Virus record (IMG/VR): IMGVR_UViG_3300050343_000191 | Location: 124,001-188,000 of that record | Direction: 5' to 3' (one strand) | Length of the DNA stretch: 64,000 nucleotides | In this document: one piece after another, positions 49,557 to 61,606 of the stretch | Position numbering within the stretch: position 1 is the first letter of the stretch | How the letters are laid out: each line of letters begins with the position of its first letter | The notes under the pieces: generated by a model | Database searches by the model: none | What the model was told of the DNA's origin: nothing | The model's input: only the letters and a program-made list of their open reading frames with translations | Position numbers and translations under genes: made by a program

Positions 49557-50171
49557 TCAGTAAACCCTACGCTCTTCTCCATATAGTGTTACGATTGCGT
49601 TGAATGAAATTGTTATTCGTGGTTTTTCAGTTGCCTTGCCAGGTGGTACACAATGCTGCAAATATGAAGGAAACATCAACAAATCTCCCTCTTCAATTTT
49701 TGGAACATATACCTCACCACAATTGTTTGAGTTCATCTCCAAACTCAAATACCTCATAGATCTCAGAGGATCCCAAAATTCAGGTGGTTGGTGCTCATCT
49801 TTATCATAAGATAAAAAATGAATGAACGAGAAATGAGAATGGTTTATCTTAGAGTACAGATGATCGTGAATTTCTTGGTACTCACCATCTCGATACACAT
49901 TATACCAAAGATCAGTGAAGTGCAATCCATATTGATCATCAAAAAATTCATCAATCGTATTGTGATAGATGTTCAACAAGATATCTTTATCTTTCTCGAT
50001 GAAATCTTTTTCTTGATTAAAAGAAGTAAGAATTTTATTAGTGGTCCAGTCTTCAGGTATTTCTAGTTCATCTAGAGAATCTAGTATAGATTGAACTAGA
50101 TTTTGTTTTAGAATCTCGTTTCCATTTACTCTAGATTGAAATATAGTTACTGGAAATACTTCCGTTTTCAT
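49557..50171 (-). CDS. 2OG-Fe(II) oxygenase (TIGR02466-like)
   Basis: WYNVY...EIHDH; EGDLLMFPSYLQHCV; RITISFN. Confidence 0.85.
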   Translation of the reverse strand: MKTEVFPVTIFQSRVNGNEILKQNLVQSILDSLDELEIPEDWTTNKILTSFNQEKDFIEKDKDILLNIYHNTIDEFFDDQYGLHFTDLWYNVYRDGEYQEIHDHLYSKINHSHFSFIHFLSYDKDEHQPPEFWDPLRSMRYLSLEMNSNNCGEVYVPKIEEGDLLMFPSYLQHCVPPGKATEKPRITISFNAIVTLYGEERRVY

Positions 50172-51292
50172 GCACCACCAACATTATTATACCAACATTT
50201 ATAACTTGGAGGTTCCCAATAAGCATACTCTAAGTCTTCTTGATTTTCAGGGTTAAAAATATATGGGAGTTCTATACACTTTTGAATATGATCTATAAGT
50301 GCATTATTATTTGAATATGCTAAAGACTGTGCATAATTCCAGAATGGGGTATCATAAATTGATCCATTCTTATAGTGCCACAAAATAAAATCTTGAACTT
50401 GAAGTATCTCAGTATGAACTATATTATTCACTTCTTCTCTTGATTGAGCACCAATCATTACATCATACAAAGATTCGGATACATTATGATGAACAAGAGA
50501 TGCAATCGCTTCCATTGGTTCAATGAATGAATATGAGTTGCCATTCAAAATAGTTCTCTCACCTCTCCACATATCTTTAGCGATATAATTATCGAAAGAA
50601 AGATAACCATTAGGTTCTACATCAAATCTTTGAATAAAATCTTTCTCAGCATCTTCTCTAGTTGTAATTGTATTATTATACAAATAACCATAAGAAACAC
50701 TATCGTGATTTGGAATTACAAATACCCAACCATTTGGTGTCGCAATATGCTCTGTCCACAATAAATTTGGATCCGCACCTTCCTTTCTGGCAAGAATTAC
50801 AGAATTGATAGGATTTGTTAAAATGTCATAAGAATCATCTAACTTATCTGGTCTTCCTCTACAATCTATAATGTATGTTGCATCAATTTCATTTTCTGGA
50901 TCAGTGATGGTTTTTTCAACAACATTAAAAATACCAGATTCTAAAACCTGTTCAGAAAATAGTTTCGGTACATAGTGCATTGCAAATGAACCACTCCGAA
51001 AAGCGTGAAAGAAGTCATCAGTATTCTTTCCCCATCCCTTATATCGAATACCTTGCTTTATTGTTGCTTTAATATTATTTTTATTTACCCAATCCAAATC
51101 AAGGACATCAAAAATAGTTTCACGAATATTTAATTGTGTTCCTTGACCAACTTTCTCAATATTAATATTAGGATCGTGATAGATTTCAATTTCATCAATA
51201 TCATAATCTTCAGTTTCCCTCAAATAATGAAGATTTAATGCTGAAATACAACCTGCGTTTCCTGCACCAATGATAGCAATTTTTTCTGTCAT
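50168..51292 (-). CDS. Flavin-dependent halogenase (PrnA-like, short form)
   Basis: GAGNAG; ATIKQGIRY (catalytic Lys position); GWVFVIP (WxWxIP-like); FIEPME. Confidence 0.75.
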   Translation of the reverse strand: MTEKIAIIGAGNAGCISALNLHYLRETEDYDIDEIEIYHDPNINIEKVGQGTQLNIRETIFDVLDLDWVNKNNIKATIKQGIRYKGWGKNTDDFFHAFRSGSFAMHYVPKLFSEQVLESGIFNVVEKTITDPENEIDATYIIDCRGRPDKLDDSYDILTNPINSVILARKEGADPNLLWTEHIATPNGWVFVIPNHDSVSYGYLYNNTITTREDAEKDFIQRFDVEPNGYLSFDNYIAKDMWRGERTILNGNSYSFIEPMEAIASLVHHNVSESLYDVMIGAQSREEVNNIVHTEILQVQDFILWHYKNGSIYDTPFWNYAQSLAYSNNNALIDHIQKCIELPYIFNPENQEDLEYAYWEPPSYKCWYNNVGGA

Positions 51293-51861
51293 TCTTTTTC
51301 AGTAAAGTTGTATTTGATAGCAACAGTGAAACGATATCCATTTCGGTATGTTGTTGCTTTATGTAGGATGCTTGCGGGAAATCCAACTAATCGATTTTGA
51401 ATTGGAGGAATTCCATAAAAAGAACCATCTACAAGGAATTGTGTTTCTCCACCATTATCGATATCATATCCTGGTGTGGTGTAGAAAAGAAATGTTTTTG
51501 CATCTACACCTTCATCTTCATCAGTATGAAAATATGGATTCTCACTTGGAGCGAAACAATTAATATACAATCTTACAATATTTTTTTTATCACAATCGGA
51601 GAATTTTTCTACAATTTTATCAGCAAATATATTATAAAATCTTTTTGTGTCTATGGTTGAATCATCAACAGCATTTTTTGGAATTCTTTCACTGGTAAGA
51701 TCATCTTCCTCCATACCATCAAACCAGACATTATGAACTAATCCTGTTACTGGTGTATCAGAATTATCTGCCTCTCCATAGTAATAAGGAGCATCGACAC
51801 AATACTCAACTACAAAGTCAAGTTCTTCTTGTGTTAAAAAATCATCTACAACATCAATCAT
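51289..51861 (-). CDS. 2OG-Fe(II) oxygenase (prolyl-hydroxylase-like)
   Basis: YINCF...YFHTD; GGETQF; NRLVGFPASILHKA; RFTVAIK. Confidence 0.85.
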   Translation of the reverse strand: MIDVVDDFLTQEELDFVVEYCVDAPYYYGEADNSDTPVTGLVHNVWFDGMEEDDLTSERIPKNAVDDSTIDTKRFYNIFADKIVEKFSDCDKKNIVRLYINCFAPSENPYFHTDEDEGVDAKTFLFYTTPGYDIDNGGETQFLVDGSFYGIPPIQNRLVGFPASILHKATTYRNGYRFTVAIKYNFTEKE

Positions 51862-52579
51862 TATACATTTCTCCTTGATAATCTAAAACTCTAAAATTAA
51901 ATGCGATTGTAATTCTTGGATAGTCTGGGGTTGGTTTTCCTGGTTTAACAGAATGAGAAAGATAAGAAGGAAACATAATAAAGTCTCCTTCTTTAAGTTC
52001 TGGATACCAAGTGTGTGCATAATTGTTTCTATCTAATTCAACACTCAAATTACGAAGTTGTGAAAGTGGATCTCTAAATTCAACTGGTTGATGAATTTTT
52101 GGATCAAAAGATAAAAAATGAATGCAAGAATAATGCGAACCATGAGGACCACCAACGTGATCATGCTCCTCTTGCCATTCACCATTCATATAAACATTAT
52201 ACCATATTTCATCAATATCAATCTTATATGGTGCATCAAAAATTGCATTAATACAAGCACCATATCTTTTTTCTAATACCTTTTGATAAGTATCATCTTC
52301 ACCAAAAAATATTTCTTTCCCTCTTGGTTCTCCATCAAATGATGTCATTAACTTATTAGTGAACCAACCCTCTGGAATCTCTAAGTTTTTTGCATCTGCT
52401 ACAATCTTATCAATAAGTAAATCTTTTAATTTATCATTATCAGTCATTGACAAATGATAATATGTAATTGGAAATACTTTACAAACAAAGTCTACAGATT
52501 TTGATATTTCTAACAGAGTTTTATTAGAAGTATCATTTTTTATAAAATTTATAGGTCCTTTAATATCTTTAGAGCTCAT
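51854..52579 (-). CDS. 2OG-Fe(II) oxygenase (TIGR02466-like)
   Basis: WYNVY...EEHDH; SCIHFL; EGDFIMFPSYLSHSV; RITIAFN. Confidence 0.85.
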   Translation of the reverse strand: MSSKDIKGPINFIKNDTSNKTLLEISKSVDFVCKVFPITYYHLSMTDNDKLKDLLIDKIVADAKNLEIPEGWFTNKLMTSFDGEPRGKEIFFGEDDTYQKVLEKRYGACINAIFDAPYKIDIDEIWYNVYMNGEWQEEHDHVGGPHGSHYSCIHFLSFDPKIHQPVEFRDPLSQLRNLSVELDRNNYAHTWYPELKEGDFIMFPSYLSHSVKPGKPTPDYPRITIAFNFRVLDYQGEMYND

Positions 52580-52649: not shown

Positions 52650-54773
52650 TTAGAACAATGCGAGAGATGTAGTACCAACACCAGGAACAACGAATTGAAT
52701 TTCATTTCCAACTACATTCATTTTAATACCTGTTCCAATACCACTACTGAATCCATTCAAAGCAGTCATAATTCCTGTTGTACGAATATCTGCGCTAGGT
52801 GTTCCATCAGCAGTAGAATCGTCAAGAGCACCTTCACTAACAAAGACTGGTCCTTGAATATTAAGAGCACCAGTTGTCATTTGAGTTACCCCAACACCTA
52901 TCGCAAGGCGTTCAATAACAGCAGTTCCATAAACTGTGAGAGCAGTAAATTCATCTAATGCAGTGGTGCCAATTCCAACTTGACCACCGTCTAGTAGTGT
53001 AATATCACTTACAGATGTTTGATCAATAGTTCCACCAATACCAAGTTGATCCCCAGTAAATTGATCAAGAGGATGACCTATTTGTACTGCTGCAAATGGT
53101 GTTTCTGTATATGATATTGGATTTATAGAAAGACCGCCACCAGTCAAATGATCATCATCAATACTAAGTCTGCCATCTACAAATAGATCTCCAACAGTAG
53201 AGACACCTGTGATATTTAAACTATTGAAGTTTTGTCCTGGTGCTGGAATAATTTCTGTTCCATCAGGATTTAGAAGTCCTGCTGAACCATCTTCAATATA
53301 GATTGCTCTAGTAGTGATTGAAGAACCAGTTCCAGGTACGGAGATGTCACCATCTACTGCAATATTTCCACCAACTTCAACACTAGTCTGTACGAATAAG
53401 TCTGATGTACTAGTAAGTCCAGTAACTTCTAATCTTGCAGTTGGATCAGTTTTACCAATACCCAGACTACCACCATAAGTGAGAGTCATAAGGTTATTTG
53501 ATCCTGTATGATGCCAATGGAAATCTCCAGTTCCGACACCAGCAGTTCCTGCTTGAAGATAATAATTTACATTACCATTTCCAAAGTTGATAAGATCTAA
53601 TGACTCATAAAGACTGTATGGGAATGCTGTATTTGGATTATTATATCTAATTCCTCCACTATTTTCTGCTAAAGAAGTAGTCGAACCTAAAGAAACAAGA
53701 GATTCTATATTAGTTGTAGTGTTAATACCACTCGATAATTGGAGAATAGATGGAGAGTTAAATTTTCTAATTGTAATATCTGATGTTAATTCAGAATCTG
53801 TCCCAACACCAATTAAAGTTGCGCTTAAAATATTTGAAACAGTTGCAACACCGACTGTAAGATCATTAATATCTACATCAGCATCAGATGTTAAACTTCT
53901 TGCTGTTGTTGCTGTACCAGTAACATCTCCAGTGATTCCACCAATGAAACTTGATGCAGCAACTGCGGATGCTGTCAATATACCAACAATAATATCTGGA
54001 GTTCCAACTAATCCTTCTGCACCAGTTGCAATGCCAGTAACATTACCAGTAACATTACCAGTAACATCTCCAGTTAAAGGTCCACTGAATGTACCAGCAG
54101 TGATAATACCTGATAAATTAAGATTGCTTGGTATTCTATTATTTTCAAGAATGGGAAGTCTATCGTTAGAGATAGTTCCTAATTCAATATTTGTACCATC
54201 TAATAATGTTAATTCGGAACCAATACCTGCAAATGAATGTGCTGTTACAATTCCAGTTGCATAGATGTCTCCAGTTGAATTGATGCCGACACCGTTTCCA
54301 AAGTTGAGTGGGTCTGTAGTGCCACCAATTTGAAGTGTAAATCTAGGATCATCAGTTGCAACACCAACAAAACCTCTATTGTAGATGCTGGTAAATCCCA
54401 AACCAACATCTATATCTAACCACTGTGATGTTGGCATTCCTTGTAGGAATCTGGCATCACCATAATATGTGACAATTCCTGATGGATCTGTTGCAGTGAT
54501 GAAACCAGATTGAATACTAATTCCAGCACCAATTAAAGTATTCCCTACCTCTATATTTTCAATCGTCGCAGTATCAGAGACGGATAATGTTTGACCTCTT
54601 AGTTGAGATGCAGTTAAAAATCCTGTAACTCTTGCATTTCCGCCATTAACGTGCAAGAGTTCTGTTGGAACCGTAGTTCCAATTCCAACCAGTCCAGTAG
54701 GACTTACAACCAGATTGTCATCATCAACTTGAACGCCATTGCGAAAGTTGAATTGCTTTCTTATATTCGCCAT
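52650..54773 (-). CDS. Tail fibre-like structural protein (707 aa)
   Basis: VGIGTTxP repeats, GIVTA/GIITA repeats and GNVTGNVTG; GATAAATA at 54794-54801 upstream. Confidence 0.8.
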   Translation of the reverse strand: MANIRKQFNFRNGVQVDDDNLVVSPTGLVGIGTTVPTELLHVNGGNARVTGFLTASQLRGQTLSVSDTATIENIEVGNTLIGAGISIQSGFITATDPSGIVTYYGDARFLQGMPTSQWLDIDVGLGFTSIYNRGFVGVATDDPRFTLQIGGTTDPLNFGNGVGINSTGDIYATGIVTAHSFAGIGSELTLLDGTNIELGTISNDRLPILENNRIPSNLNLSGIITAGTFSGPLTGDVTGNVTGNVTGIATGAEGLVGTPDIIVGILTASAVAASSFIGGITGDVTGTATTARSLTSDADVDINDLTVGVATVSNILSATLIGVGTDSELTSDITIRKFNSPSILQLSSGINTTTNIESLVSLGSTTSLAENSGGIRYNNPNTAFPYSLYESLDLINFGNGNVNYYLQAGTAGVGTGDFHWHHTGSNNLMTLTYGGSLGIGKTDPTARLEVTGLTSTSDLFVQTSVEVGGNIAVDGDISVPGTGSSITTRAIYIEDGSAGLLNPDGTEIIPAPGQNFNSLNITGVSTVGDLFVDGRLSIDDDHLTGGGLSINPISYTETPFAAVQIGHPLDQFTGDQLGIGGTIDQTSVSDITLLDGGQVGIGTTALDEFTALTVYGTAVIERLAIGVGVTQMTTGALNIQGPVFVSEGALDDSTADGTPSADIRTTGIMTALNGFSSGIGTGIKMNVVGNEIQFVVPGVGTTSLALF

Positions 54774-54799
54774 CGTATATGGTGATTTTTATCTATTTA

Positions 54800-55822
54800 T
54801 CAAAAGACTCCACCATTAAATGTTGGACCGTATATAGTCCCAGATACGACATAATTTACACTTCCACTACCTGAGATAACAATAGATCTACCTTTGCCAC
54901 CGCCACCACTATCACCACTACTACCATTACTACCATAACTTCCACCATTGCCGCCGCTACGAGCGCCATCGCCGCCGCCACCACCGCCGCCTCCAGGACC
55001 GCCTTGACTACCATCACCACCTCTACTACCGCCGTTGCCGCCTCCAGAACCACCTGCACCGCCTGGAAATCCTTGACCGCCGCCTCCGCCGCCGCCACCT
55101 TTTCTTCTTCTATCCTTCCTTCTATTTCTACCTCTGGAATCACACCACCATCCACATCTCCTATAATCACGGGATCGTTTGTGCCTATCCTTTCTTTTAC
55201 CAGCACCGCCGCCTCCTCCACCGCCGCCACCAGCGATGAATCCATAGTTAGTAATATCGAGAGGATATTCAACACCTAATCCAGAAGATCCCCTCTTACC
55301 ACCACTAGGACCTCCACTTCTATTTCCACCTTTTCCACCAGCACCAGCGGCACCAATAATTGCACCAGAACCACCAATATTCAAATCAAGATTGGTATTA
55401 CTATTCCAACTACCAGTTCTTAATGCACACTTTAGTCCACGACTACCATCATACTCTGATCCAATTCTCTTATTGACGTGGATAATAACTCTAGTTCCAT
55501 TAGTATTACTCGGTCTTCCCCTAAAACCACCAATTGTTTGAACTCTATTGGAACTACCATTATTATATCTGTTTCTAGCAGTAGCTCTTCTTATATTACT
55601 ACCATCATAATAATTTACAACACAATTAAGTTGTTTGCTGTAAAAATTACTTATACGGATAGTTCCACTCTGTGGAACACCAGTGTCAAGGGGCAGATTG
55701 GACATTGCCCCAAAAGTTTCACTAACTCGATATCTACCTAAACTAACCCCACCTCCACCATCAGCGCGACCAAACTCACTAATGATATTAGAGAACCTTA
55801 TTGTTCCAGAACCCTGTAACAT
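54800..55822 (-). CDS. Glycine-rich tail-fibre adhesin (gp38-like)
   Basis: N-terminal GTIRFSNIISEFG cap; glycine-rich motifs (ITNYGFIAGGGGGGGGG); follows a chaperone-bearing fibre; AATAAATA at 55836-55843. Confidence 0.65.
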   Translation of the reverse strand: MLQGSGTIRFSNIISEFGRADGGGGVSLGRYRVSETFGAMSNLPLDTGVPQSGTIRISNFYSKQLNCVVNYYDGSNIRRATARNRYNNGSSNRVQTIGGFRGRPSNTNGTRVIIHVNKRIGSEYDGSRGLKCALRTGSWNSNTNLDLNIGGSGAIIGAAGAGGKGGNRSGGPSGGKRGSSGLGVEYPLDITNYGFIAGGGGGGGGGAGKRKDRHKRSRDYRRCGWWCDSRGRNRRKDRRRKGGGGGGGGQGFPGGAGGSGGGNGGSRGGDGSQGGPGGGGGGGGDGARSGGNGGSYGSNGSSGDSGGGGKGRSIVISGSGSVNYVVSGTIYGPTFNGGVF

Positions 55823-55834
55823 ATCTCTTTTTGA

Positions 55835-58800
55835 TTATTTATTGAGTTTATCTTCAAGAGTAGAAACTTTATCAGAAAGTTCCTTAATTGCCTCAATCAA
55901 AAGTGGGACAATTTTTTCATATTGAACAGTAATGTAATCATCATCACGAGTCTTAACTGCTTCCGGAAGAACTTTTTGAATTTCTTGTGCAGAAACACCT
56001 ACGTTTCTTACATCAGTTGGGAAACCAAGTTCAGCACCTTTTTCATTGAAGTTGTACGTAAATCCACTTAGAGAGCAAACTTTAGCGAGAGCATCATCTA
56101 GTGGTGCCTTGTCGGTCTTAACACGATCATCAGATATGAAAGCGACAAGATCTCCAAGCAATCTTAAAGTATTGCTTGATGAGTCATAGGATATTCCAGA
56201 ATCAACTCTTGCTGTTGTATAATGATTTCCAGGTGCGGTCCCTTCTTGTAGTAAGAGATAATGCGGACCAAAGGAATTTCCTAATCCATTAACTCTGATT
56301 TGATTAGACTTATCAGCAGTTCCTGCAAATCTGGATGCAGTAACAGTGTTGCCACCAAAGTTTCCAGATCCATTTACAGTTAATGTTCCATCAATAGTAG
56401 TAGCATCAAGTGTTGTGTTTCCAGCAACATTAAGTCCATCAAGTTCTGTAGTACCATCAACATCAAGGTTGCCTGTAACAACTAAGTTATCATCAACTCT
56501 TGTTGTTCCACTAGCAGAGTCGAGTTCTAAGTTTCCTGTTGCTGTATCAATTTCATTGTCACCACTTACACCAATTCTAATTTCATCAATGTGTGCCTCA
56601 GAGAATGGTTTTGCTGCTGTACCAAGATATGCACCCTCATCAGTATCGGGAACAATACCAGTATCAACAGTGACTTCTCCAGTTAATTTGGAAGATCCAT
56701 TAACAGTAAGGGTTCCATCAAGTTGTAAGTTACCACCAAAATCAACATCACCACAAACAAATAGTTTCTTGCCGATTGCAACACCACCTTGAACTCTCAG
56801 TGCAGCATTTGCATCTGTGCAAGAAGTTGCATCATTAGTATTTTGAAAGTCAACTCTACCAATAACTCTCAAATCATTATTGAGAACCAGTTTCTTGTTC
56901 ATTCTCACATCACCGTTGAAGGTGATAGGACCATCAAACTGTGAAAGAATTTGCTTAGACTTACCACCCTCAACCAAGATTCTTTCTTTGACAATAACCT
57001 CATCAAATACAACAGAGAGTCTATTGGGATCTTCACCAGTTACGGTTGGTGTTGGAACATCAAATGTGGTTTGCTCACCAGACTGTGCCGAATACTTAGT
57101 GTTTCCAATGTAGAAATCACCATCACTGTCCATACCAGTGTAAAGAACAGTACCACAAGAGGTTTCTTGTGCTTGAGACAAGAACTCTTCCTTTTCACTA
57201 AGAGTCTTAACTTGGACTTGTGGGAGACCAGTAGAGTAGTTACCAGGACCATAACCAAGATATTCAAAGGTATGACCAGAAGCACGAAGGATTGAAGGTC
57301 TACGAAGTTCAATAGGTGCTAACTTAATTTTCTTAATCTGAGCACCGTTTGCGTGCGGTTCAATAATGGTTCCCATAGAACCGCGAATGACCTGAATCTC
57401 ATTATTACCACCACCAATGAGAGTTGTAGACTTAAGTCTCATAATCTCATTGCCAATCTGGAGGTAAGAACCAAGTGGGAATCTTGCGATTACTTCACTT
57501 GCACCAGTTGGAAGATTGGCAATAAAGTTCTCTTCAGTTGTAATTGATTGACCCAAGAACAACACTTCATTATCATAATTTGGAATACCTCTAGTTCCAA
57601 GATTTTCACCTAGAGAGTCGGCACTTGCATTGTTAGCAGAAAATCCGTGCTTCAGTACGTGCTTAGTAGTAGAAAGTGATGTAGTGGAGGAAACTTGGAA
57701 AGTATTGTATGTGGCATTATTGACAATAAAATCACCAACAAGACCATTTGAAGCATCAGTAAGTCTTACTTTGTTACCAACAACGAGTCCGTGTCCTTCA
57801 GTTGTGACAATTTGTTCAATCCCAGTAGTAGGTGTAGTTACACCATTAGCAGCAACGATACCAACTCTGCCAATAACCATTGCATACTGACCTGAGATAA
57901 TAACAGGATCATTTGCAGTTTTTGCAATCGTTAATTGTTTTTTGGAACTAGAATCACTAATTCTATAGTAACCATCAGTTGCAGTACCAATACCAGTAAT
58001 TTGAACATAGTCTGCTGTTGCTGTTGAAATGCCAGATAATGTGGTTACAATATTTGCAGATGGTGTTCCACCAATAGTGCTAGAATCAAAGTAAAGTGTT
58101 TCTGAAGGGGTATATCCAGATCCAGGTTCTTTAATAGTTGCAATAGTAACAGCACCACTACTAACTGTAACGTCAGCAGTAGCACCATCCCACATAGCAT
58201 TACTTGGTGCGGCATTATTATTAAACAGTCTTACATTAAAGTAATCTCCATCAATATGACCTGATCCACCATTTAATGTTGTATAGGAATTTAATCCATT
58301 CAGTTGGTGCTCGTCGTCAAATACGATTACCGCAGAAGCACCACTATCAACAACACTAGTAATCTTATTACCAAGAGAGAATGAATCGACAAACTTGTCA
58401 AGAGTTTCTCTAGTAATACTTCTCTTCAGATCATTAGTGACAACCTCACCAATTGGATTTCTCTTAGCAAGACTAACTGCCGATGTTGGGTTATCGTCTA
58501 CATTATCTCTATCTAACTGTGGGTATAGATTTGTTACCTTTTGACTATACTTAGAATTTACAAATTCACTACCAATAGCATTTCCACTGTTAAGAACATA
58601 CAGATAATAAACACCATCTTGAACATTTTGGATGTATGGTTTAATAACTTCTGTACGATAGAGATAGAAGTTTTCATTATTATTGTTTCTCTTGAATCTT
58701 GGAAGTACTTTATTTCTGACGTTGGTATCATTCAGAATATTACCAGGATCATGAGTAACACCAGAAATATCTACATCATTAACTGTAAATGTCTTATCAT

Positions 58801-61606
58801 CTACAATATCCTCAACATTGAATGTACCATTAAATCCAAAGTCTTTACTTGCTGCACCATTTGTACTGCTAACTACATCAGAAATAATAACAACATCTTC
58901 ATTCTTTAGATTGTGTGGTTTATCTGCTCTAATTGTGATTAAGTTTGCACCATTGTCGTAAGTGCAAGTAGTAATAAATCTAGGATTACGATCAAAATCA
59001 TAATCTGATCTACCAATATCAGTAAGATTAAAGTCAGAAGTCTCTCTTACATTGACAGTGCTTGAATCTTGTAAAATAAATCCATTGACTGGATCTCTGG
59101 TATTGTCAAGTTCCTTAGGAACAACATAACGCATTCTATAGAGTTTTTCATCCAAACTTCTATCATCTGCCTTTCTCTTGACATATGTGATTTCACTATC
59201 GTTATTGGAAAGAGTAATAACGTGCTGGAAAAGTGGGCTGTTGTTCTCACAGTGAATGAACCATCCAGCAGTTTCATTTGTTACTACACTAGTTTCTACA
59301 TTGGTGATAGATCTAGTTGCAGAGTCATATTGAATTGGATGTCCAAGTTCACCTGCTTCTTTATCTGAAACTCTACTCTCTACTCTAATTTCAGATCCAA
59401 GATAGACTGGAATGTATATGGGAGTCTGTGCTTCAGCATTAGTTTTAGAAGAAGCAACTTGGAACTGAGTACCATTGAGAGACATTCCATCTGCTCTAGT
59501 ACCATTCTTTTCAAGGGTGATCGCAAAATATACACTTTCTTCTTCTAAACCTTCAGGAAGATCGCCATTTTCACTGAAAATACGAATCGATTCACCATTT
59601 TTTAGATCGTGAGATGCTGTACAATTAAACACCATTTGAGTTGGTGATTGTGCAACAGGAGTTGTGATAGTTACATCTCTATAGATCTTTGCAGAAGTAT
59701 CAGTTCCAGAGATGGTATTTGTATTAAGATCTAATGGACCATTGGTCATTAAAATCTTACCGGCATTAGTATCAGCGTCTAAGAAAACTTCATCATCGAC
59801 TTTAGCACCAATCCTAAAACCCTGAGAAATAATTGGAGGTGGTACATCCTCTGCAGTGTATCCTAACAGATAGATTCTATTCGCTCTATTAATACTCTTA
59901 GTTCTAGAAACATCAAACTGAACCCACTCAACCTCAAATTCAGAATTAGAAACTGATCTAGGAGCAATAATATTGGTAATATAACCTTTATCATCTTTGG
60001 TGAATGCATCTCTCTTAAATCCTTCCGCGCCAAGAGAGAACTGACCAAAGTTGGAGTTGGAGTTAGTAATTGATGCGTCACCACCACTATCTGCAAGGAA
60101 GTGTAAGTGGAAACCAATAGCAAAAACAGAAACAACCTGAACAACCGAATCGTTGCTCATTTTAATGTGAACTGTCTTCCAACCTTCTCTATAAACAGCG
60201 TCAGAACTTAAGTGTAAGACTTGATTTGAGTTTGAAGACTCTGCAGATAGTTCATCTCCAGATCTAGTTTTATAGTTGATACCCTGCCACTGACGGTTAC
60301 TCTTATTGTACTTAACAAAAGCACGATCATCTTTCTGCAGAGATACAGCAGTAAATTGTGCAACAACCATTGAGCGGAAACCATCCGCCTTAGAACCATC
60401 AGCATGCATACCCTGCATACCATAAACAGAACGCAATGATACGTTAAAGATATATGGAGATGCACCAGAAACTGTATCAGTCTCAATAGTTACGCTGGCA
60501 TTTGATCCAATACTTAATCCCGCAGGTTGACCAGCAGGAAGGTTTGCCCTTACAAATGGGAGTGCATACGTAAATCTAGTTTCATCAAGAACTTGAACAA
60601 CTTTTGTTGAGATATTATAGTCAGGTTCACTGATTCCACGAATCTTAACAGGTGTGCCTGCACTCAGTTCGTGAGCAATCTGAGTTGTAACTGTAACGAT
60701 AGTTCCAGGAGTTGCACCATCACCAGAGATAATATTGGAGATCCTTACTGGGTCAGCACCAAATGCACCAACAATTTCCCATTCTGGACGCTGCTTAGAG
60801 AAAGATTCTGCCTGTGATGGATACTTCTGATCAATTTCTCTACCAGATGCTCTGTTGAAAGCATTACTGATCTTGCTATAGTACATATCAAGATCAGTGA
60901 GTTGATACCCACCAACCAAGTTAACACCATCAGCATACTCAAAGCAGGTAACTTTGTGGTGTGAAAATACAGGTTTTGATCTATTATTCTCAGAGAAATC
61001 TTTGGGGTCCGTGTAAACTAACCCACTTTCATCACCATCAAAGAAGGTAAACTGCCAGAAATAGCAAGCACCAGTAATTCTAAAGATTGCAGACTGCCTT
61101 ACAGTATCGTCTGTTGGATTTGGAACATATTTTGGTCTAACTTTAGTCTTTCTTAAATCTAGACCAACGATAGAAGTACCACGAGGAATAATGATACCAC
61201 CATACACACTATTAAACTTATACAGGATATTATTTTCCTGTGTAAGGTCAAAGTTGGAGTTGAGAGTGAGAGTTAATTCTGATTGAGCATTTGTTTGTGC
61301 TCCATTTGGTGCAACGGAAATTGCATTATTGCCAATATCCTGAATTGCATATCCAGGTCTATTATCAATTAAGTGCTCACCAGGAAACACTAGAATTGTG
61401 GTCTTCTCTACAATATCGTTGTCTTCACCTCTAAGATATGAAAATCTTGCCGACTCAATCAGAGCACGTTGAATTGTTTTAAAGGGTTTTGTTAATGAAT
61501 TTCCTTGATTTTCAACACCATCAGTGGAATCAAGGTCATTAGGATTAACATACAGAATGCGACCTTCAGCATTCTTGATAAAATTCTCAAGCTTATTAAG
61601 AGGCAT
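55835..61606 (-). CDS. Long tail fibre with a C-terminal intramolecular chaperone (peptidase S74-like)
   Basis: N-terminal ILYV...NQGNSLTKPFKTIQRA beta-helix start; C-terminal SDDRVKTD...GVSAQEIQKVLPEAV...VQYEKIVPLLIEAIKEL; AATAAATA at 61639-61646. Confidence 0.85.
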   Translation of the reverse strand: MPLNKLENFIKNAEGRILYVNPNDLDSTDGVENQGNSLTKPFKTIQRALIESARFSYLRGEDNDIVEKTTILVFPGEHLIDNRPGYAIQDIGNNAISVAPNGAQTNAQSELTLTLNSNFDLTQENNILYKFNSVYGGIIIPRGTSIVGLDLRKTKVRPKYVPNPTDDTVRQSAIFRITGACYFWQFTFFDGDESGLVYTDPKDFSENNRSKPVFSHHKVTCFEYADGVNLVGGYQLTDLDMYYSKISNAFNRASGREIDQKYPSQAESFSKQRPEWEIVGAFGADPVRISNIISGDGATPGTIVTVTTQIAHELSAGTPVKIRGISEPDYNISTKVVQVLDETRFTYALPFVRANLPAGQPAGLSIGSNASVTIETDTVSGASPYIFNVSLRSVYGMQGMHADGSKADGFRSMVVAQFTAVSLQKDDRAFVKYNKSNRQWQGINYKTRSGDELSAESSNSNQVLHLSSDAVYREGWKTVHIKMSNDSVVQVVSVFAIGFHLHFLADSGGDASITNSNSNFGQFSLGAEGFKRDAFTKDDKGYITNIIAPRSVSNSEFEVEWVQFDVSRTKSINRANRIYLLGYTAEDVPPPIISQGFRIGAKVDDEVFLDADTNAGKILMTNGPLDLNTNTISGTDTSAKIYRDVTITTPVAQSPTQMVFNCTASHDLKNGESIRIFSENGDLPEGLEEESVYFAITLEKNGTRADGMSLNGTQFQVASSKTNAEAQTPIYIPVYLGSEIRVESRVSDKEAGELGHPIQYDSATRSITNVETSVVTNETAGWFIHCENNSPLFQHVITLSNNDSEITYVKRKADDRSLDEKLYRMRYVVPKELDNTRDPVNGFILQDSSTVNVRETSDFNLTDIGRSDYDFDRNPRFITTCTYDNGANLITIRADKPHNLKNEDVVIISDVVSSTNGAASKDFGFNGTFNVEDIVDDKTFTVNDVDISGVTHDPGNILNDTNVRNKVLPRFKRNNNNENFYLYRTEVIKPYIQNVQDGVYYLYVLNSGNAIGSEFVNSKYSQKVTNLYPQLDRDNVDDNPTSAVSLAKRNPIGEVVTNDLKRSITRETLDKFVDSFSLGNKITSVVDSGASAVIVFDDEHQLNGLNSYTTLNGGSGHIDGDYFNVRLFNNNAAPSNAMWDGATADVTVSSGAVTIATIKEPGSGYTPSETLYFDSSTIGGTPSANIVTTLSGISTATADYVQITGIGTATDGYYRISDSSSKKQLTIAKTANDPVIISGQYAMVIGRVGIVAANGVTTPTTGIEQIVTTEGHGLVVGNKVRLTDASNGLVGDFIVNNATYNTFQVSSTTSLSTTKHVLKHGFSANNASADSLGENLGTRGIPNYDNEVLFLGQSITTEENFIANLPTGASEVIARFPLGSYLQIGNEIMRLKSTTLIGGGNNEIQVIRGSMGTIIEPHANGAQIKKIKLAPIELRRPSILRASGHTFEYLGYGPGNYSTGLPQVQVKTLSEKEEFLSQAQETSCGTVLYTGMDSDGDFYIGNTKYSAQSGEQTTFDVPTPTVTGEDPNRLSVVFDEVIVKERILVEGGKSKQILSQFDGPITFNGDVRMNKKLVLNNDLRVIGRVDFQNTNDATSCTDANAALRVQGGVAIGKKLFVCGDVDFGGNLQLDGTLTVNGSSKLTGEVTVDTGIVPDTDEGAYLGTAAKPFSEAHIDEIRIGVSGDNEIDTATGNLELDSASGTTRVDDNLVVTGNLDVDGTTELDGLNVAGNTTLDATTIDGTLTVNGSGNFGGNTVTASRFAGTADKSNQIRVNGLGNSFGPHYLLLQEGTAPGNHYTTARVDSGISYDSSSNTLRLLGDLVAFISDDRVKTDKAPLDDALAKVCSLSGFTYNFNEKGAELGFPTDVRNVGVSAQEIQKVLPEAVKTRDDDYITVQYEKIVPLLIEAIKELSDKVSTLEDKLNK

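What the first reader, a model, noticed from the sequence alone, without database searches (positions are those of the whole stretch)
55100..55198. Arg-rich CGWWC hairpin inserted in a gp38-like polyglycine adhesin
Between two glycine-rich motifs lies KRKDRHKRSRDYRRCGWWCDSRGRNRRKDRRRK, with 18 of 33 residues R/K, arranged symmetrically around a Cys-Gly-Trp-Trp-Cys turn. In T2/T6/S16 gp38 the loops between glycine motifs set receptor specificity. This loop recalls disulfide-bonded cationic LPS-binding hairpins such as tachyplesin and could be an electrostatic probe for anionic LPS or exopolysaccharide. The upstream fibre with a self-cleaving chaperone completes a gp37-gp38 arrangement.
Basis: partly seen in the sequence, partly recalled or inferred. 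Interest (0 to 1): 0.6.

Follow-up and report, generated by a model that had tools for sequence, protein, structure and literature searches.

The report
Arginine finger on cyanophage fibre adhesin
A marine cyanophage carries a small T2/S16-type (gp38-like) tail-fibre tip protein in which the loop that touches the host in known relatives has grown into a 33-residue, strongly positive hairpin capped by Cys-Gly-Trp-Trp-Cys; this loop is swapped between related phages like a cassette, so it is a likely handle on host recognition.

Summary

The ORF is a remote but real gp38-type adhesin:
- Pfam GP38 scores just below cut-off.
- VIA-align gives Z 20.9 to S16 gp38 and Z 19.6 to PP01 gp38.
- It lies directly behind a 1923-aa fibre that carries a Peptidase_S74 chaperone.
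- A complex model caps the three fibre C-termini with three N-terminal pseudo-repeats (0.73 against best control 0.50).

The loop aligns to the hypervariable loop after the long Gly helix (PP01 loop-B), which sits at the distal tip and is needed for adsorption there. Here it is 33-37 residues, against 12-14 in distant relatives.

Evidence that the loop is real and functional:
- It is under purifying selection (dN/dS 0.38).
- Its two arms change length together.
- Both cysteines are kept or lost together.
- Loop types (CGxWC, LLWM, poly-R-W, TIGD) switch independently of the N-terminal phylogeny.

Most likely it is an exposed cationic, aromatic-tipped receptor-contact finger. The target is unknown. 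The tachyplesin/anionic-LPS idea is only an analogy and is weakened by the phosphate-free LPS of marine Synechococcus. I rate it a new variant of a known kind.

The parts
55100..55198 (-). Arg-rich loop, residues 209-241 of the adhesin: 14-residue arm, CGWWC tip, 14-residue arm. It is the equivalent of PP01 gp38 loop-B and of the S16 hypervariable loop after PGII helix 3.
55205..55231 (-). Gly9 tract (res 198-206). It is the counterpart of the long central polyglycine-II helix 3 of S16 gp38 (151-158). Ala-Gly at 55199-55204 links it to the loop.
   Evidence: dN/dS is 0.08 with saturated synonymous change.
55076..55099 (-). Gly8 tract (res 242-249), the return polyglycine helix after the loop, followed by the conserved QGFPGG turn.
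54800..55822 (-). gp38-like adhesin gene, 340 aa plus stop (protein P0001).
55538..55822 (-). N-terminal attachment domain (about res 1-95). It has three short helices and three pseudo-repeats (res 5-11, 24-29, 53-58) that are predicted to hold the three fibre C-termini.
54803..55075 (-). Rest of the polyglycine sandwich with short Gly/Ser/Asn/Asp loops and the C-terminal beta strands (res 250-340).
55835..61606 (-). Tail fibre gene, 1923 aa, 12 bases upstream of the adhesin start. A homologue in S-SCSM1 is annotated as a virion protein.
55838..56134 (-). C-terminal intramolecular chaperone of the fibre. Pfam Peptidase_S74 covers res 1825-1885 and the domain runs to res 1923.
   Evidence: 49.5 bits, cut-off 22
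56135..56152 (-). Last six residues of the presumed mature fibre (res 1819-1824, DLVAFI). This is the only fibre segment in the predicted interface with the adhesin.
52650..54773 (-). Downstream 707-aa tail protein (phrog_3269). Together with the fibre C-terminus and the adhesin it forms the variable module.

Best explanation
The 340-aa ORF is a monomeric gp38-type adhesin. It caps the trimeric 1923-aa fibre after the fibre's S74 chaperone has cut itself off. Three pseudo-repeats in its N-terminal domain each hold one fibre C-terminus.

Its body is a beta-helix whose loops extend into a polyglycine-II sandwich. The first long Gly helix runs away from the fibre, so the loop that follows it lies at the far tip. 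That loop has grown from about 12 residues to 33-37. It forms a two-armed, probably beta-hairpin finger with these features:
- Arg at alternate positions on both arms.
- An invariant core R-x3-R-C-G-x-W-C-[D/E]-x-R.
- A Trp-bearing tip, probably closed by a Cys-Cys bridge.

The finger most likely makes direct contact with the cyanobacterial surface. Long-range attraction to an acidic site would combine with aromatic stacking on sugars or an interfacial site. It would act together with the shorter distal loops.

Its type is exchanged between phages by recombination in the flanking GGN tracts, which retunes host recognition.

Shown: the fold, position, selection, arm co-variation and cassette exchange. 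Inferred: exposure, the disulfide, receptor contact and the nature of the target.
For: Fold and family:
- VIA-align gives 6f45_D Z 20.9 (241 residues aligned) and 9v85_A Z 19.6.
- Foldseek gives E 2.9e-8 and 1.7e-7.
- Pfam GP38 gives E 6.6e-5 for this protein, and 21 of 102 relatives hit it.

Position of the loop:
- hhalign places the loop as an insertion between the S16 Gly8 helix and the next Gly motif.
- In S16 the loops after odd-numbered helices are distal (PMC6851490).
- PP01 loop-B lies at the distal tip and is needed for adsorption, and K168 and Y169 may touch LPS sugars (PMC12892980).

Hairpin:
- Arm lengths change together: 14/14, 16/16, 10/10. Deletions in L027 and L029 are matched on both arms.
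- Arg shows a period of 2 near the tip.
- AF2 with the clade alignment gives strands 209-217 and 233-241.

Cysteines: both are present in 53 sequences, only one in 1, and neither in the 13 LLWM types.

Selection: dN/dS is 0.38, with AGR/CGN switches that keep Arg.

Cassette behaviour:
- P0028 and P0037 are 99% identical in the N-terminal part but 40% in the loop. P0001 and P0049 are 52% and 77%.
- On the tree, well-supported branches force at least 4 switches of the LLWM type.
- Flanking genes are 98-100% identical where the adhesin is 90%.

Mounting on the fibre:
- S74 domain.
- Conserved order fibre, adhesin, 670-708-aa protein in 9 independent loci.
- Complex score 0.73, best control 0.50, runs agree in at least 95% of contacts, partner pLDDT at least 83. 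This mark was reached by 51 of 78 solved complexes and 2 of 108 mismatched pairs.
Against: - The loop itself is modelled with low confidence: pLDDT below 50 with the broad alignment and 50-57 with the clade alignment. I could not inspect coordinates, so exposure rests on topology and on homology to PP01 and S16.
- Among close relatives the loop is slightly more conserved than the rest (pN 0.17 against 0.21-0.25). Fine-scale specificity may therefore lie in the other loops.
- In PP01 the primary determinant is loop-E, not loop-B.
- A test of mirrored charge pairs gave no preferred register.
- No host, receptor or virion-proteome data exist for this protein.
- Marine Synechococcus LPS is nearly uncharged, so the acidic partner is unidentified.
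- The complex pass may reflect the model's memory of the solved S16 complex, and the job differs from the calibration set.
Confidence: 0.6

Rival explanations
1. The finger is an internal structural or regulatory element, not a receptor contact. It would bind an acidic partner within the virion, for example to hold the fibre in a retracted state, to dock the neighbouring 707-aa tail protein, or to help assembly of the adhesin on the fibre.
For: The loop is more conserved than the other distal loops among close relatives. The base motifs (G-x-G-E/K-x-R-D at the start and D-R-R-R-K at the end) are nearly invariant. The adhesin always travels with the 670-708-aa protein.
Against: The loop emerges from the end of the polyglycine sandwich opposite the fibre attachment site. 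The homologous loop in PP01 is distal and needed for adsorption. Whole-loop types are exchanged independently of the N-terminal domain, as expected of a specificity element rather than a fixed internal contact.
Confidence: 0.15
2. The finger acts after binding as a membrane-active element. Like Arg/Trp-rich antimicrobial or cell-penetrating hairpins, it would disturb or insert into the outer membrane or a porin lumen, making adsorption irreversible.
For: All but one loop type combine strongly cationic arms with a hydrophobic or Trp tip: WW, IW, PW, LLWM or a single W. The length of 33-37 residues could span tens of angstroms.
Against: There is no homology to any such peptide; the PDB search with the loop found nothing meaningful. 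There is one finger per fibre. Marine Synechococcus LPS lacks the phosphates that such peptides use. No evidence bears on insertion.
Confidence: 0.1
3. The loop is a nearly neutral low-complexity expansion of the glycine tract. GGN repeats slipped and then decayed under A+T pressure into Arg, Ser, Asp, Cys and Trp codons, which are one step from Gly. On this view the loop has no function of its own.
For: About 23 of 33 loop codons are within one base change of a Gly codon (from the sequence). Intermediate relatives have Gly/Ser/Thr-rich left arms.
Against: dN/dS is 0.38. Arg is kept through two-step codon switches. Several positions are invariant (R-5, R-1, C, G, W, C, acidic +1, R+3). Indels are matched on the two arms, and the pattern holds down to about 50% identity. 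The origin may be as described, but the present state is under selection.
Confidence: 0.04
4. The Arg-rich reading is a frame artefact: the real protein uses another frame over this stretch.
For: The +1 frame is open (ORF 54856-55275, -) and reads as a more ordinary-looking acidic peptide.
Against: Two compensating frameshifts would be needed. The Gly tracts on both sides are in frame. Codon-position variability and synonymous Arg switches fit the annotated frame. The CGxWC motif is conserved as protein in 53 relatives.
Confidence: 0.01

Closest known systems
gp38 adhesin of Salmonella phage S16 (PDB 6F45) and of E. coli phage PP01 (PDB 9V85); T2/T6-type gp38 (Pfam PF05268)
   Same: - Same three-part build: a small N-terminal attachment domain with three short helices, a beta-helix, and a polyglycine-II sandwich made of Gly motifs separated by variable loops.
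- The same conserved landmarks around the long Gly helix: N-x-G-[WF]-I before it and G-x-P after the return helix.
- The gene lies directly behind the distal fibre gene.
- The variable loops come in a limited palette that is reshuffled.

   Different: - Sequence similarity is marginal: below Pfam's cut-off, and the PDB profile search found no gp38.
- Loop-B is 33-37 residues with net charge +9 to +17, instead of 8-10 residues.
- The fibre it caps ends in a self-cleaving S74 chaperone. In the model the adhesin grips the last six residues of each chain, rather than inserting three Trp into pockets.
- The host is a marine cyanobacterium, not an enterobacterium.
Glycine-rich tip domain of the tail fibre gp24 of freshwater cyanophage Pam3
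   Same: It is a cyanophage receptor-binding tip built from stacked Gly-rich extended motifs with variable distal ends, and it resembles S16 gp38 structurally (PMC9608196).
   Different: In Pam3 the domain is part of the trimeric fibre itself (12 motifs, TNF-like domain, separate Tfa-type chaperone). It is not a separate monomeric cap, and no long charged loop is described.
Disulfide-stapled cationic beta-hairpin peptides (tachyplesin, polyphemusin, arenicin; Limulus anti-LPS factor loop)
   Same: Arg-rich antiparallel arms, aromatic residues and Cys near the turn. This is a resemblance in composition and presumed shape only, drawn from general knowledge and not tested here.
   Different: There is no sequence relationship. 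At most one disulfide is possible, across a 3-residue turn. The finger is a loop of a 340-aa structural protein, not a free peptide. The arms carry regular acidic residues and are not amphipathic in the hydrophobic sense.

Membership tests
gp38 tail-fibre adhesin (Pfam PF05268, T2/T6/S16 type) | Sequence match to the family profile above the curated cut-off | tested here: not met
   The score is 23.3 bits against a cut-off of 25, E 6.6e-5, over res 101-211. 21 of 102 relatives match at E <= 1e-3, the best at 2e-8. hhalign to S16 gp38 gives probability 57% and E 1.1e-4. This is a remote branch.
gp38 tail-fibre adhesin (Pfam PF05268, T2/T6/S16 type) | Fold: N-terminal three-helix cap, beta-helix and polyglycine-II sandwich | tested here: met
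   The AF2 model has pLDDT 86 and pTM 0.82. VIA-align gives 6f45_D Z 20.9, rmsd 5.8, 241 of 248 residues aligned over model 1-335; and 9v85_A Z 19.6, rmsd 3.0, 204 aligned. The next hits have Z about 3.
gp38 tail-fibre adhesin (Pfam PF05268, T2/T6/S16 type) | Conserved glycine-rich motifs separated by hypervariable segments that come in a limited, reshuffled palette | tested here: met
   Gly columns are invariant or nearly so. Loop-B varies from 12 to 39 residues in at least five types. Loop type is decoupled from the N-terminal phylogeny. Compare Trojet 2011.
gp38 tail-fibre adhesin (Pfam PF05268, T2/T6/S16 type) | Gene immediately downstream of the distal long-fibre gene | tested here: met
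   There is a 12-base gap after the 1923-aa fibre gene. The same order is seen in loci L021, L023, L025, L027 and L028. L029 has one 149-aa ORF between them.
gp38 tail-fibre adhesin (Pfam PF05268, T2/T6/S16 type) | One monomer binds the tip of the fibre trimer through its N-terminal domain | tested here: inconclusive
   The complex model scores 0.73 against a best control of 0.50. The interface joins fibre res 1819-1824 of all three chains with adhesin res 5-11, 24-29 and 53-58. The model supports binding but does not show it, and it may draw on the solved S16 complex.
gp38 tail-fibre adhesin (Pfam PF05268, T2/T6/S16 type) | Present in virions and determines receptor specificity | not testable with these tools
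   No isolate or proteome is available. Only contigs from RNA libraries overlap the gene.
Fibre with C-terminal intramolecular chaperone (Peptidase_S74) | Profile match above cut-off at the C-terminus of a fibre protein | tested here: met
   PF13884 scores 49.5 bits against a cut-off of 22, over res 1825-1885 of 1923. Self-cleavage itself was not tested.
Tachyplesin-type antimicrobial beta-hairpins | Free peptide of about 17-25 residues, two cross-strand disulfides, amphipathic cationic hairpin that binds LPS | tested here: not met
   It is a loop inside a 340-aa protein with only two Cys, four residues apart, and has no sequence match to any solved peptide. LPS binding is not testable here.

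The most novel reading that the evidence does not exclude
The Trp- and Arg-rich finger, or the fibre module as a whole, is post-translationally modified by the four enzymes encoded just downstream in the same orientation: two 2OG-Fe(II) oxygenases, a third weak one, and a flavin-dependent Trp-halogenase homologue at 49557-52579. A halogenated or hydroxylated adhesin tip would then be part of host recognition. This would also give a natural substrate to the cyanophage halogenases, for which none is known (VirX1 of cyanophage Syn10; PMC8407142).

Evidence so far is adjacency only:
- The cluster follows the module in all loci of this clade with enough sequence after the module.
- The one loop type without a Trp tip (L025, L026) lacks the halogenase but keeps the oxygenases.

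Against it:
- The association is confounded by common descent.
- Distant gp38-like loci show no such cluster within their flanks.
- A 2OG oxygenase also sits next to the fibre in S-PRM1, which has no adhesin match.
Probability: 0.07. Interest if true: 0.85.

Novelty: new variant of a known kind. Interest (0 to 1): 0.5.

Why it matters
How marine T4-like cyanophages recognise Prochlorococcus and Synechococcus is largely unknown, and no receptor-binding tip protein has been characterised for them.

- **A candidate tip protein.** This locus gives a concrete candidate: a small gp38-type cap on a giant fibre. It is common in marine metagenomes (258 relatives in one search). The tblastn of the adhesin against the phage collection found only two uncultured marine viruses, and a profile search of five cultured cyanophages found none.
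- **A marker for host range.** One dominant, easily typed loop exists in a few exchangeable versions. That makes loop type a testable marker for host range in metagenomes and in single-cell virus-host pairs.
- **An extreme of the fold.** It shows how far the polyglycine-sandwich scaffold can be pushed: a 33-37-residue loop of net charge up to +17 on a fold whose known loops have 5-10 residues.
- **A design template.** This is of interest for adhesin engineering.

Tried and rejected
- **PDB sequence searches.** A profile search with the family alignment found no gp38, only Gly/Ser linkers. The same search with the loop alone gave one chance hit at E 0.46. Sequence alone does not link the protein to solved structures; the fold does.
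- **tblastn against 50,697 phage records.** Only two uncultured marine viruses matched, and only in the N-terminal half. A profile search of five cultured cyanophage genomes found nothing. That search had no positive control within the same call, so it is weak on its own.
- **Cluster names.** Lookups for ten relatives returned no informative annotation.
- **Mirrored charge pairs.** A test for a preferred hairpin register was inconclusive.
- **Second AF2 run.** The clade-only alignment lengthened the predicted two-stranded base of the loop but left pLDDT at 50-57. Model coordinates cannot be inspected here, so no geometric measure of exposure was possible.
- **Reads.** All runs were available only as contigs. 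They confirm the sequence, and RNA-library contigs overlap the gene including the loop (one with two substitutions and a 1-base gap at low depth). They cannot show transcription level or within-population variation, and the GGN tracts attract many unrelated contigs.
- **Alternative frame.** Considered and rejected.
- **Searches and codes not used.** The exhaustive protein search was not used, because the word search and family scans had already placed the protein. No alternative genetic code was used.
Full report
**Observation**

The minus strand of window 54800-55822 holds a 340-aa ORF. They contain 13 Arg, 5 Lys, 4 Asp, 2 Cys and 2 Trp, laid out as 14 residues, CGWWC, 14 residues. They lie between a Gly9 tract (res 198-206, then Ala-Gly) and a Gly8 tract (res 242-249).

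In the 38 ORFs of at least 100 aa in the window, R+K make up 8.7%. No other 33-residue window reaches even 13 R/K, and the binomial P is about 2e-11.

The same protein stands on 14 public contigs. Two IMG/VR contigs carry it at 100%. DNA contigs of two other runs match 54307-56500 without a difference.

**Reading frame and selection**

The GGN repeats keep another frame open (ORF 54856-55275), so I checked the frame on nine homologous genes taken from the window and from fetched loci.
- In the loop, the third codon position of the annotated frame varies most: 19 sites against 13 and 13.
- Arg is kept through AGR/CGN switches.
- Nei-Gojobori dN/dS is 0.38 in the loop, against 0.43 in the N-terminal part, 0.41 in the C-terminal part and 0.08 in the Gly9 tract.

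The loop is therefore translated as read and is under purifying selection like the rest of the protein.

**What the protein is**

- Pfam GP38 (PF05268) matches residues 101-211 at E 6.6e-5, with 23.3 bits against a cut-off of 25.
- 21 of 102 relatives match it at E <= 1e-3.
- A profile of the family finds no gp38 among PDB sequences.
- hhalign against S16 gp38, read from the phage's genome record, aligns 181 columns at E 1.1e-4.

The fold settles it. An AlphaFold2 model built on 102 relatives has pLDDT 86 and pTM 0.82. It matches the gp38 structures as follows.

| Method | S16 gp38 (6f45_D) | PP01 gp38 (9v85) |
|---|---|---|
| Foldseek | E 1.7e-7 | E 2.9e-8 |
| VIA-align | Z 20.9, 241 of 248 residues aligned, model 1-335 | Z 19.6, rmsd 3.0 |

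The next hits in VIA-align have Z about 3. The protein is thus a remote member of the gp38 adhesin fold family, N-terminal cap included, although it fails Pfam's own threshold.

**Genome and neighbourhood**

The window lies in a 231-kb virus record that also encodes psbA and psbD. Its DNA is nearest to Synechococcus and Prochlorococcus myoviruses. It is a T4-like cyanophage.

Twelve bases upstream of the adhesin, a 1923-aa tail-fibre gene ends; its last 100 residues are a Peptidase_S74 intramolecular chaperone (49.5 bits, cut-off 22). Downstream lies a 707-aa tail protein (phrog_3269).

The order fibre, adhesin, 670-708-aa protein recurs in every related locus that is long enough.

Divergence is concentrated in this module. 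In locus L003 the flanking genes are 98-100% identical to the window while the adhesin is 90%. In L004 the fibre N-terminus is 98% identical and its C-terminus 72%.

**Mounting on the fibre**

I folded three copies of fibre residues 1690-1824 (up to the presumed cleavage site) together with the adhesin.
- The score was 0.73, with a best control of 0.50.
- The three runs agreed in at least 95% of contacts, and the partner pLDDT was at least 83.
- This mark was reached by 51 of 78 solved complexes and 2 of 108 mismatched pairs.

Only the last six residues of each fibre chain (1819-1824) touch the adhesin. Each lies against one of three N-terminal segments (5-11, 24-29, 53-58). Two of these are obvious sequence repeats, and each sits beside one of the three short helices.

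This is a plausible way for a monomer to cap a trimer. It parallels S16, where three helices carry the contacts. The pass may owe something to the solved S16 complex, and the job differs from the calibration set, so it supports binding without showing it.

**Where the loop sits**

In S16 gp38 the sandwich consists of ten polyglycine-II helices. Helix 3 is the long Gly8 run that leaves the beta-helix, and the five loops at the far end carry host-range variation (PMC6851490).

The conserved landmarks N-x-G-[WF]-I-x-Gly8 before the loop, and Gly-x-P after the return helix, are shared between S16 and this protein. hhalign places the Arg-rich stretch as an insertion exactly in the S16 segment between them.

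In PP01 gp38 this is loop-B (res 158-170). [quoted passage not shown] Loop-E is the main determinant there (PMC12892980).

By topology and homology the finger therefore lies at the receptor-facing end. The models do not place it with confidence. pLDDT is below 50 with the broad alignment. With a clade-only alignment it is 50-57, with strands at 209-217 and 233-241.

**Anatomy across relatives**

A word-based search gave 258 relatives, all unnamed and from marine metagenomes. The loop between the two Gly tracts has 12-14 residues in distant members, often acidic and built around a D-K-x-x-D motif. In the clade around the window it has 23-39 residues.

Within that clade:
- The arms change length together: 14/14, 16/16 and 10/10, with a few 12/10 or 13/11. 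Deletions in L027 and L029 are matched on both arms.
- R-5, R-1, C, G, W, C, an acidic residue at +1 and R+3 are invariant. Arg occupies alternate positions next to the tip on both arms, a period of two that fits extended strands rather than helices.
- Both Cys are present in 53 sequences, one in a single sequence, and neither in the 13 sequences whose tip reads LLWM.

Together these point to a two-armed hairpin whose tip is probably closed by a disulfide. A test for a preferred register from mirrored charges was inconclusive.

**Cassette behaviour**

Four long loop types occur: C-G-[W/I/P]-W-C, [L/F]-L-W-M, a poly-Arg/single-Trp/poly-Lys form, and a less charged type with a T-I-G-D tip.

On a maximum-likelihood tree of residues 1-198, well-supported branches force at least four switches of the LLWM type. 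Pairs of relatives show the decoupling directly.

| Pair | N-terminal identity | Loop identity |
|---|---|---|
| P0028 vs P0037 | 99% | 40% |
| P0001 vs P0049 | 52% | 77% |

This is the behaviour described for the hypervariable segments of T-even gp38: a restricted palette of motifs reshuffled by exchanges in or near the conserved glycine motifs (PMC3157838).

Among the closest relatives, however, the loop is slightly more conserved than the rest. It looks like a coarse, exchangeable determinant rather than the site of fine tuning.

**Mechanism**

The best-supported reading is an exposed, cationic, aromatic-tipped finger at the distal end of a fibre-tip adhesin. It would contact the host surface and help set host range.

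The nature of the target is open. LPS of marine Synechococcus WH8102 and CC9311 lacks phosphate, Kdo and heptose and carries a single galacturonic acid (PMC4515613). The classical phosphate-rich LPS target is therefore unlikely. Acidic protein loops, acidic glycans or other surface polymers remain possible.

Rivals are listed with their evidence in the Rival explanations section:
- an internal latch or assembly contact;
- a membrane-active role after binding;
- a neutral decay product of the Gly tract (contradicted by selection);
- a frame artefact (rejected).

**Comparison and novelty**

It works like, and folds like, T2/S16-type gp38. It differs in four ways:
- marginal sequence similarity;
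- the fibre it caps, which has an S74 chaperone and is held by its terminal strands;
- the host group;
- the size and charge of loop-B.

I found no description of gp38-type adhesins in marine cyanomyoviruses in the searched literature. The nearest is the glycine-rich tip that is part of the Pam3 fibre.

The tblastn of the adhesin against the phage collection found only two uncultured marine viruses, and five cultured cyanophages gave no match to the family profile. In S-SCSM1 the homologous fibre, a virion protein, is followed directly by the next fibre gene.

I rate this a new variant of a known kind, of moderate interest.

**Side observation**

Directly downstream in the same orientation, with overlapping stop and start codons, lie two 2OG-Fe(II) oxygenases, a third weak one and a Trp-halogenase homologue.

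The cluster accompanies the module throughout the clade. The halogenase is missing in the two loci whose loop tip lacks Trp.

This is adjacency confounded by descent, and a 2OG oxygenase also neighbours the fibre in S-PRM1, which gave no adhesin match. It does leave open that the fibre module is enzymatically modified, and I give that as the most novel reading not excluded.

Noticed in passing
window 49557-52579 (-): Four enzyme genes run in the same direction as the fibre module, with overlapping stop and start codons. They are 2OG-FeII_Oxy_5 (241 aa), a 190-aa ORF with a weak 2OG-FeII_Oxy_3 match, a Trp_halogenase homologue (374 aa, 116 bits), and 2OG-FeII_Oxy_5 (204 aa). The cluster follows the fibre, adhesin and tail-protein module in the related loci that reach far enough. 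L025 and L026, whose loop tip lacks Trp, keep the oxygenases but lack the halogenase. In L024 the halogenase is split into two ORFs.
   Followed up: partly
window 55538-55822 (-), adhesin res 1-95: The N-terminal domain contains three pseudo-repeats: res 5-11 and 53-58 share the motif S-G-T-I-R-[FI]-S, and res 24-29 is a third, degenerate copy. Each lies next to a short helix, and in the complex model each pairs with one fibre C-terminus. This is a three-fold pseudo-symmetric cap made from a single chain.
   Followed up: partly
window 54800-56600 compared with loci L003, L004, L009: The fibre C-terminal region, the adhesin and the 707-aa protein form a local hot spot of divergence. In L003 the flanking genes are 98-100% identical and the adhesin 90%. 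In L004 the fibre N-terminus is 98% identical and its C-terminus 72%. In L009 the fibre C-terminus is 84% identical but the adhesin only 56%. This indicates mosaic exchange within the module.
   Followed up: partly
window 54856-55275 (-) and 55004-55279 (+): Long open frames overlap the adhesin gene in other frames and on the other strand. They read as Ala/Val-rich or Ser/Thr-rich peptides and are by-products of the GGN repeats, not genes.
   Followed up: yes
loci L021, L023, L027 (upstream of the fibre gene): Small conserved ORFs precede the fibre gene in related phages: a DUF7294 protein (63-66 aa) and a 56-58-aa ORF with a weak PhdYeFM antitoxin match. I did not check whether the window has them beyond 61606.
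   Followed up: no
window 54924-55007 and 55176-55259: In public RNA and DNA runs the Gly-coding GGN tracts attract hundreds of unrelated contigs, with depth spikes and many false 'joints'. Read-based statistics over these tracts are not usable. One RNA-library contig covering the loop shows two C>A differences and a 1-base gap at depth 3.7, which is probably error or a relative.
   Followed up: partly
window 52650-54773 (-): The 707-aa tail protein carries short tandem peptide repeats of the form T-G-[DN]-V-T-G around res 235-255. It matches phrog_3269 over its first 480 residues only, and its C-terminal third has no family match.
   Followed up: no
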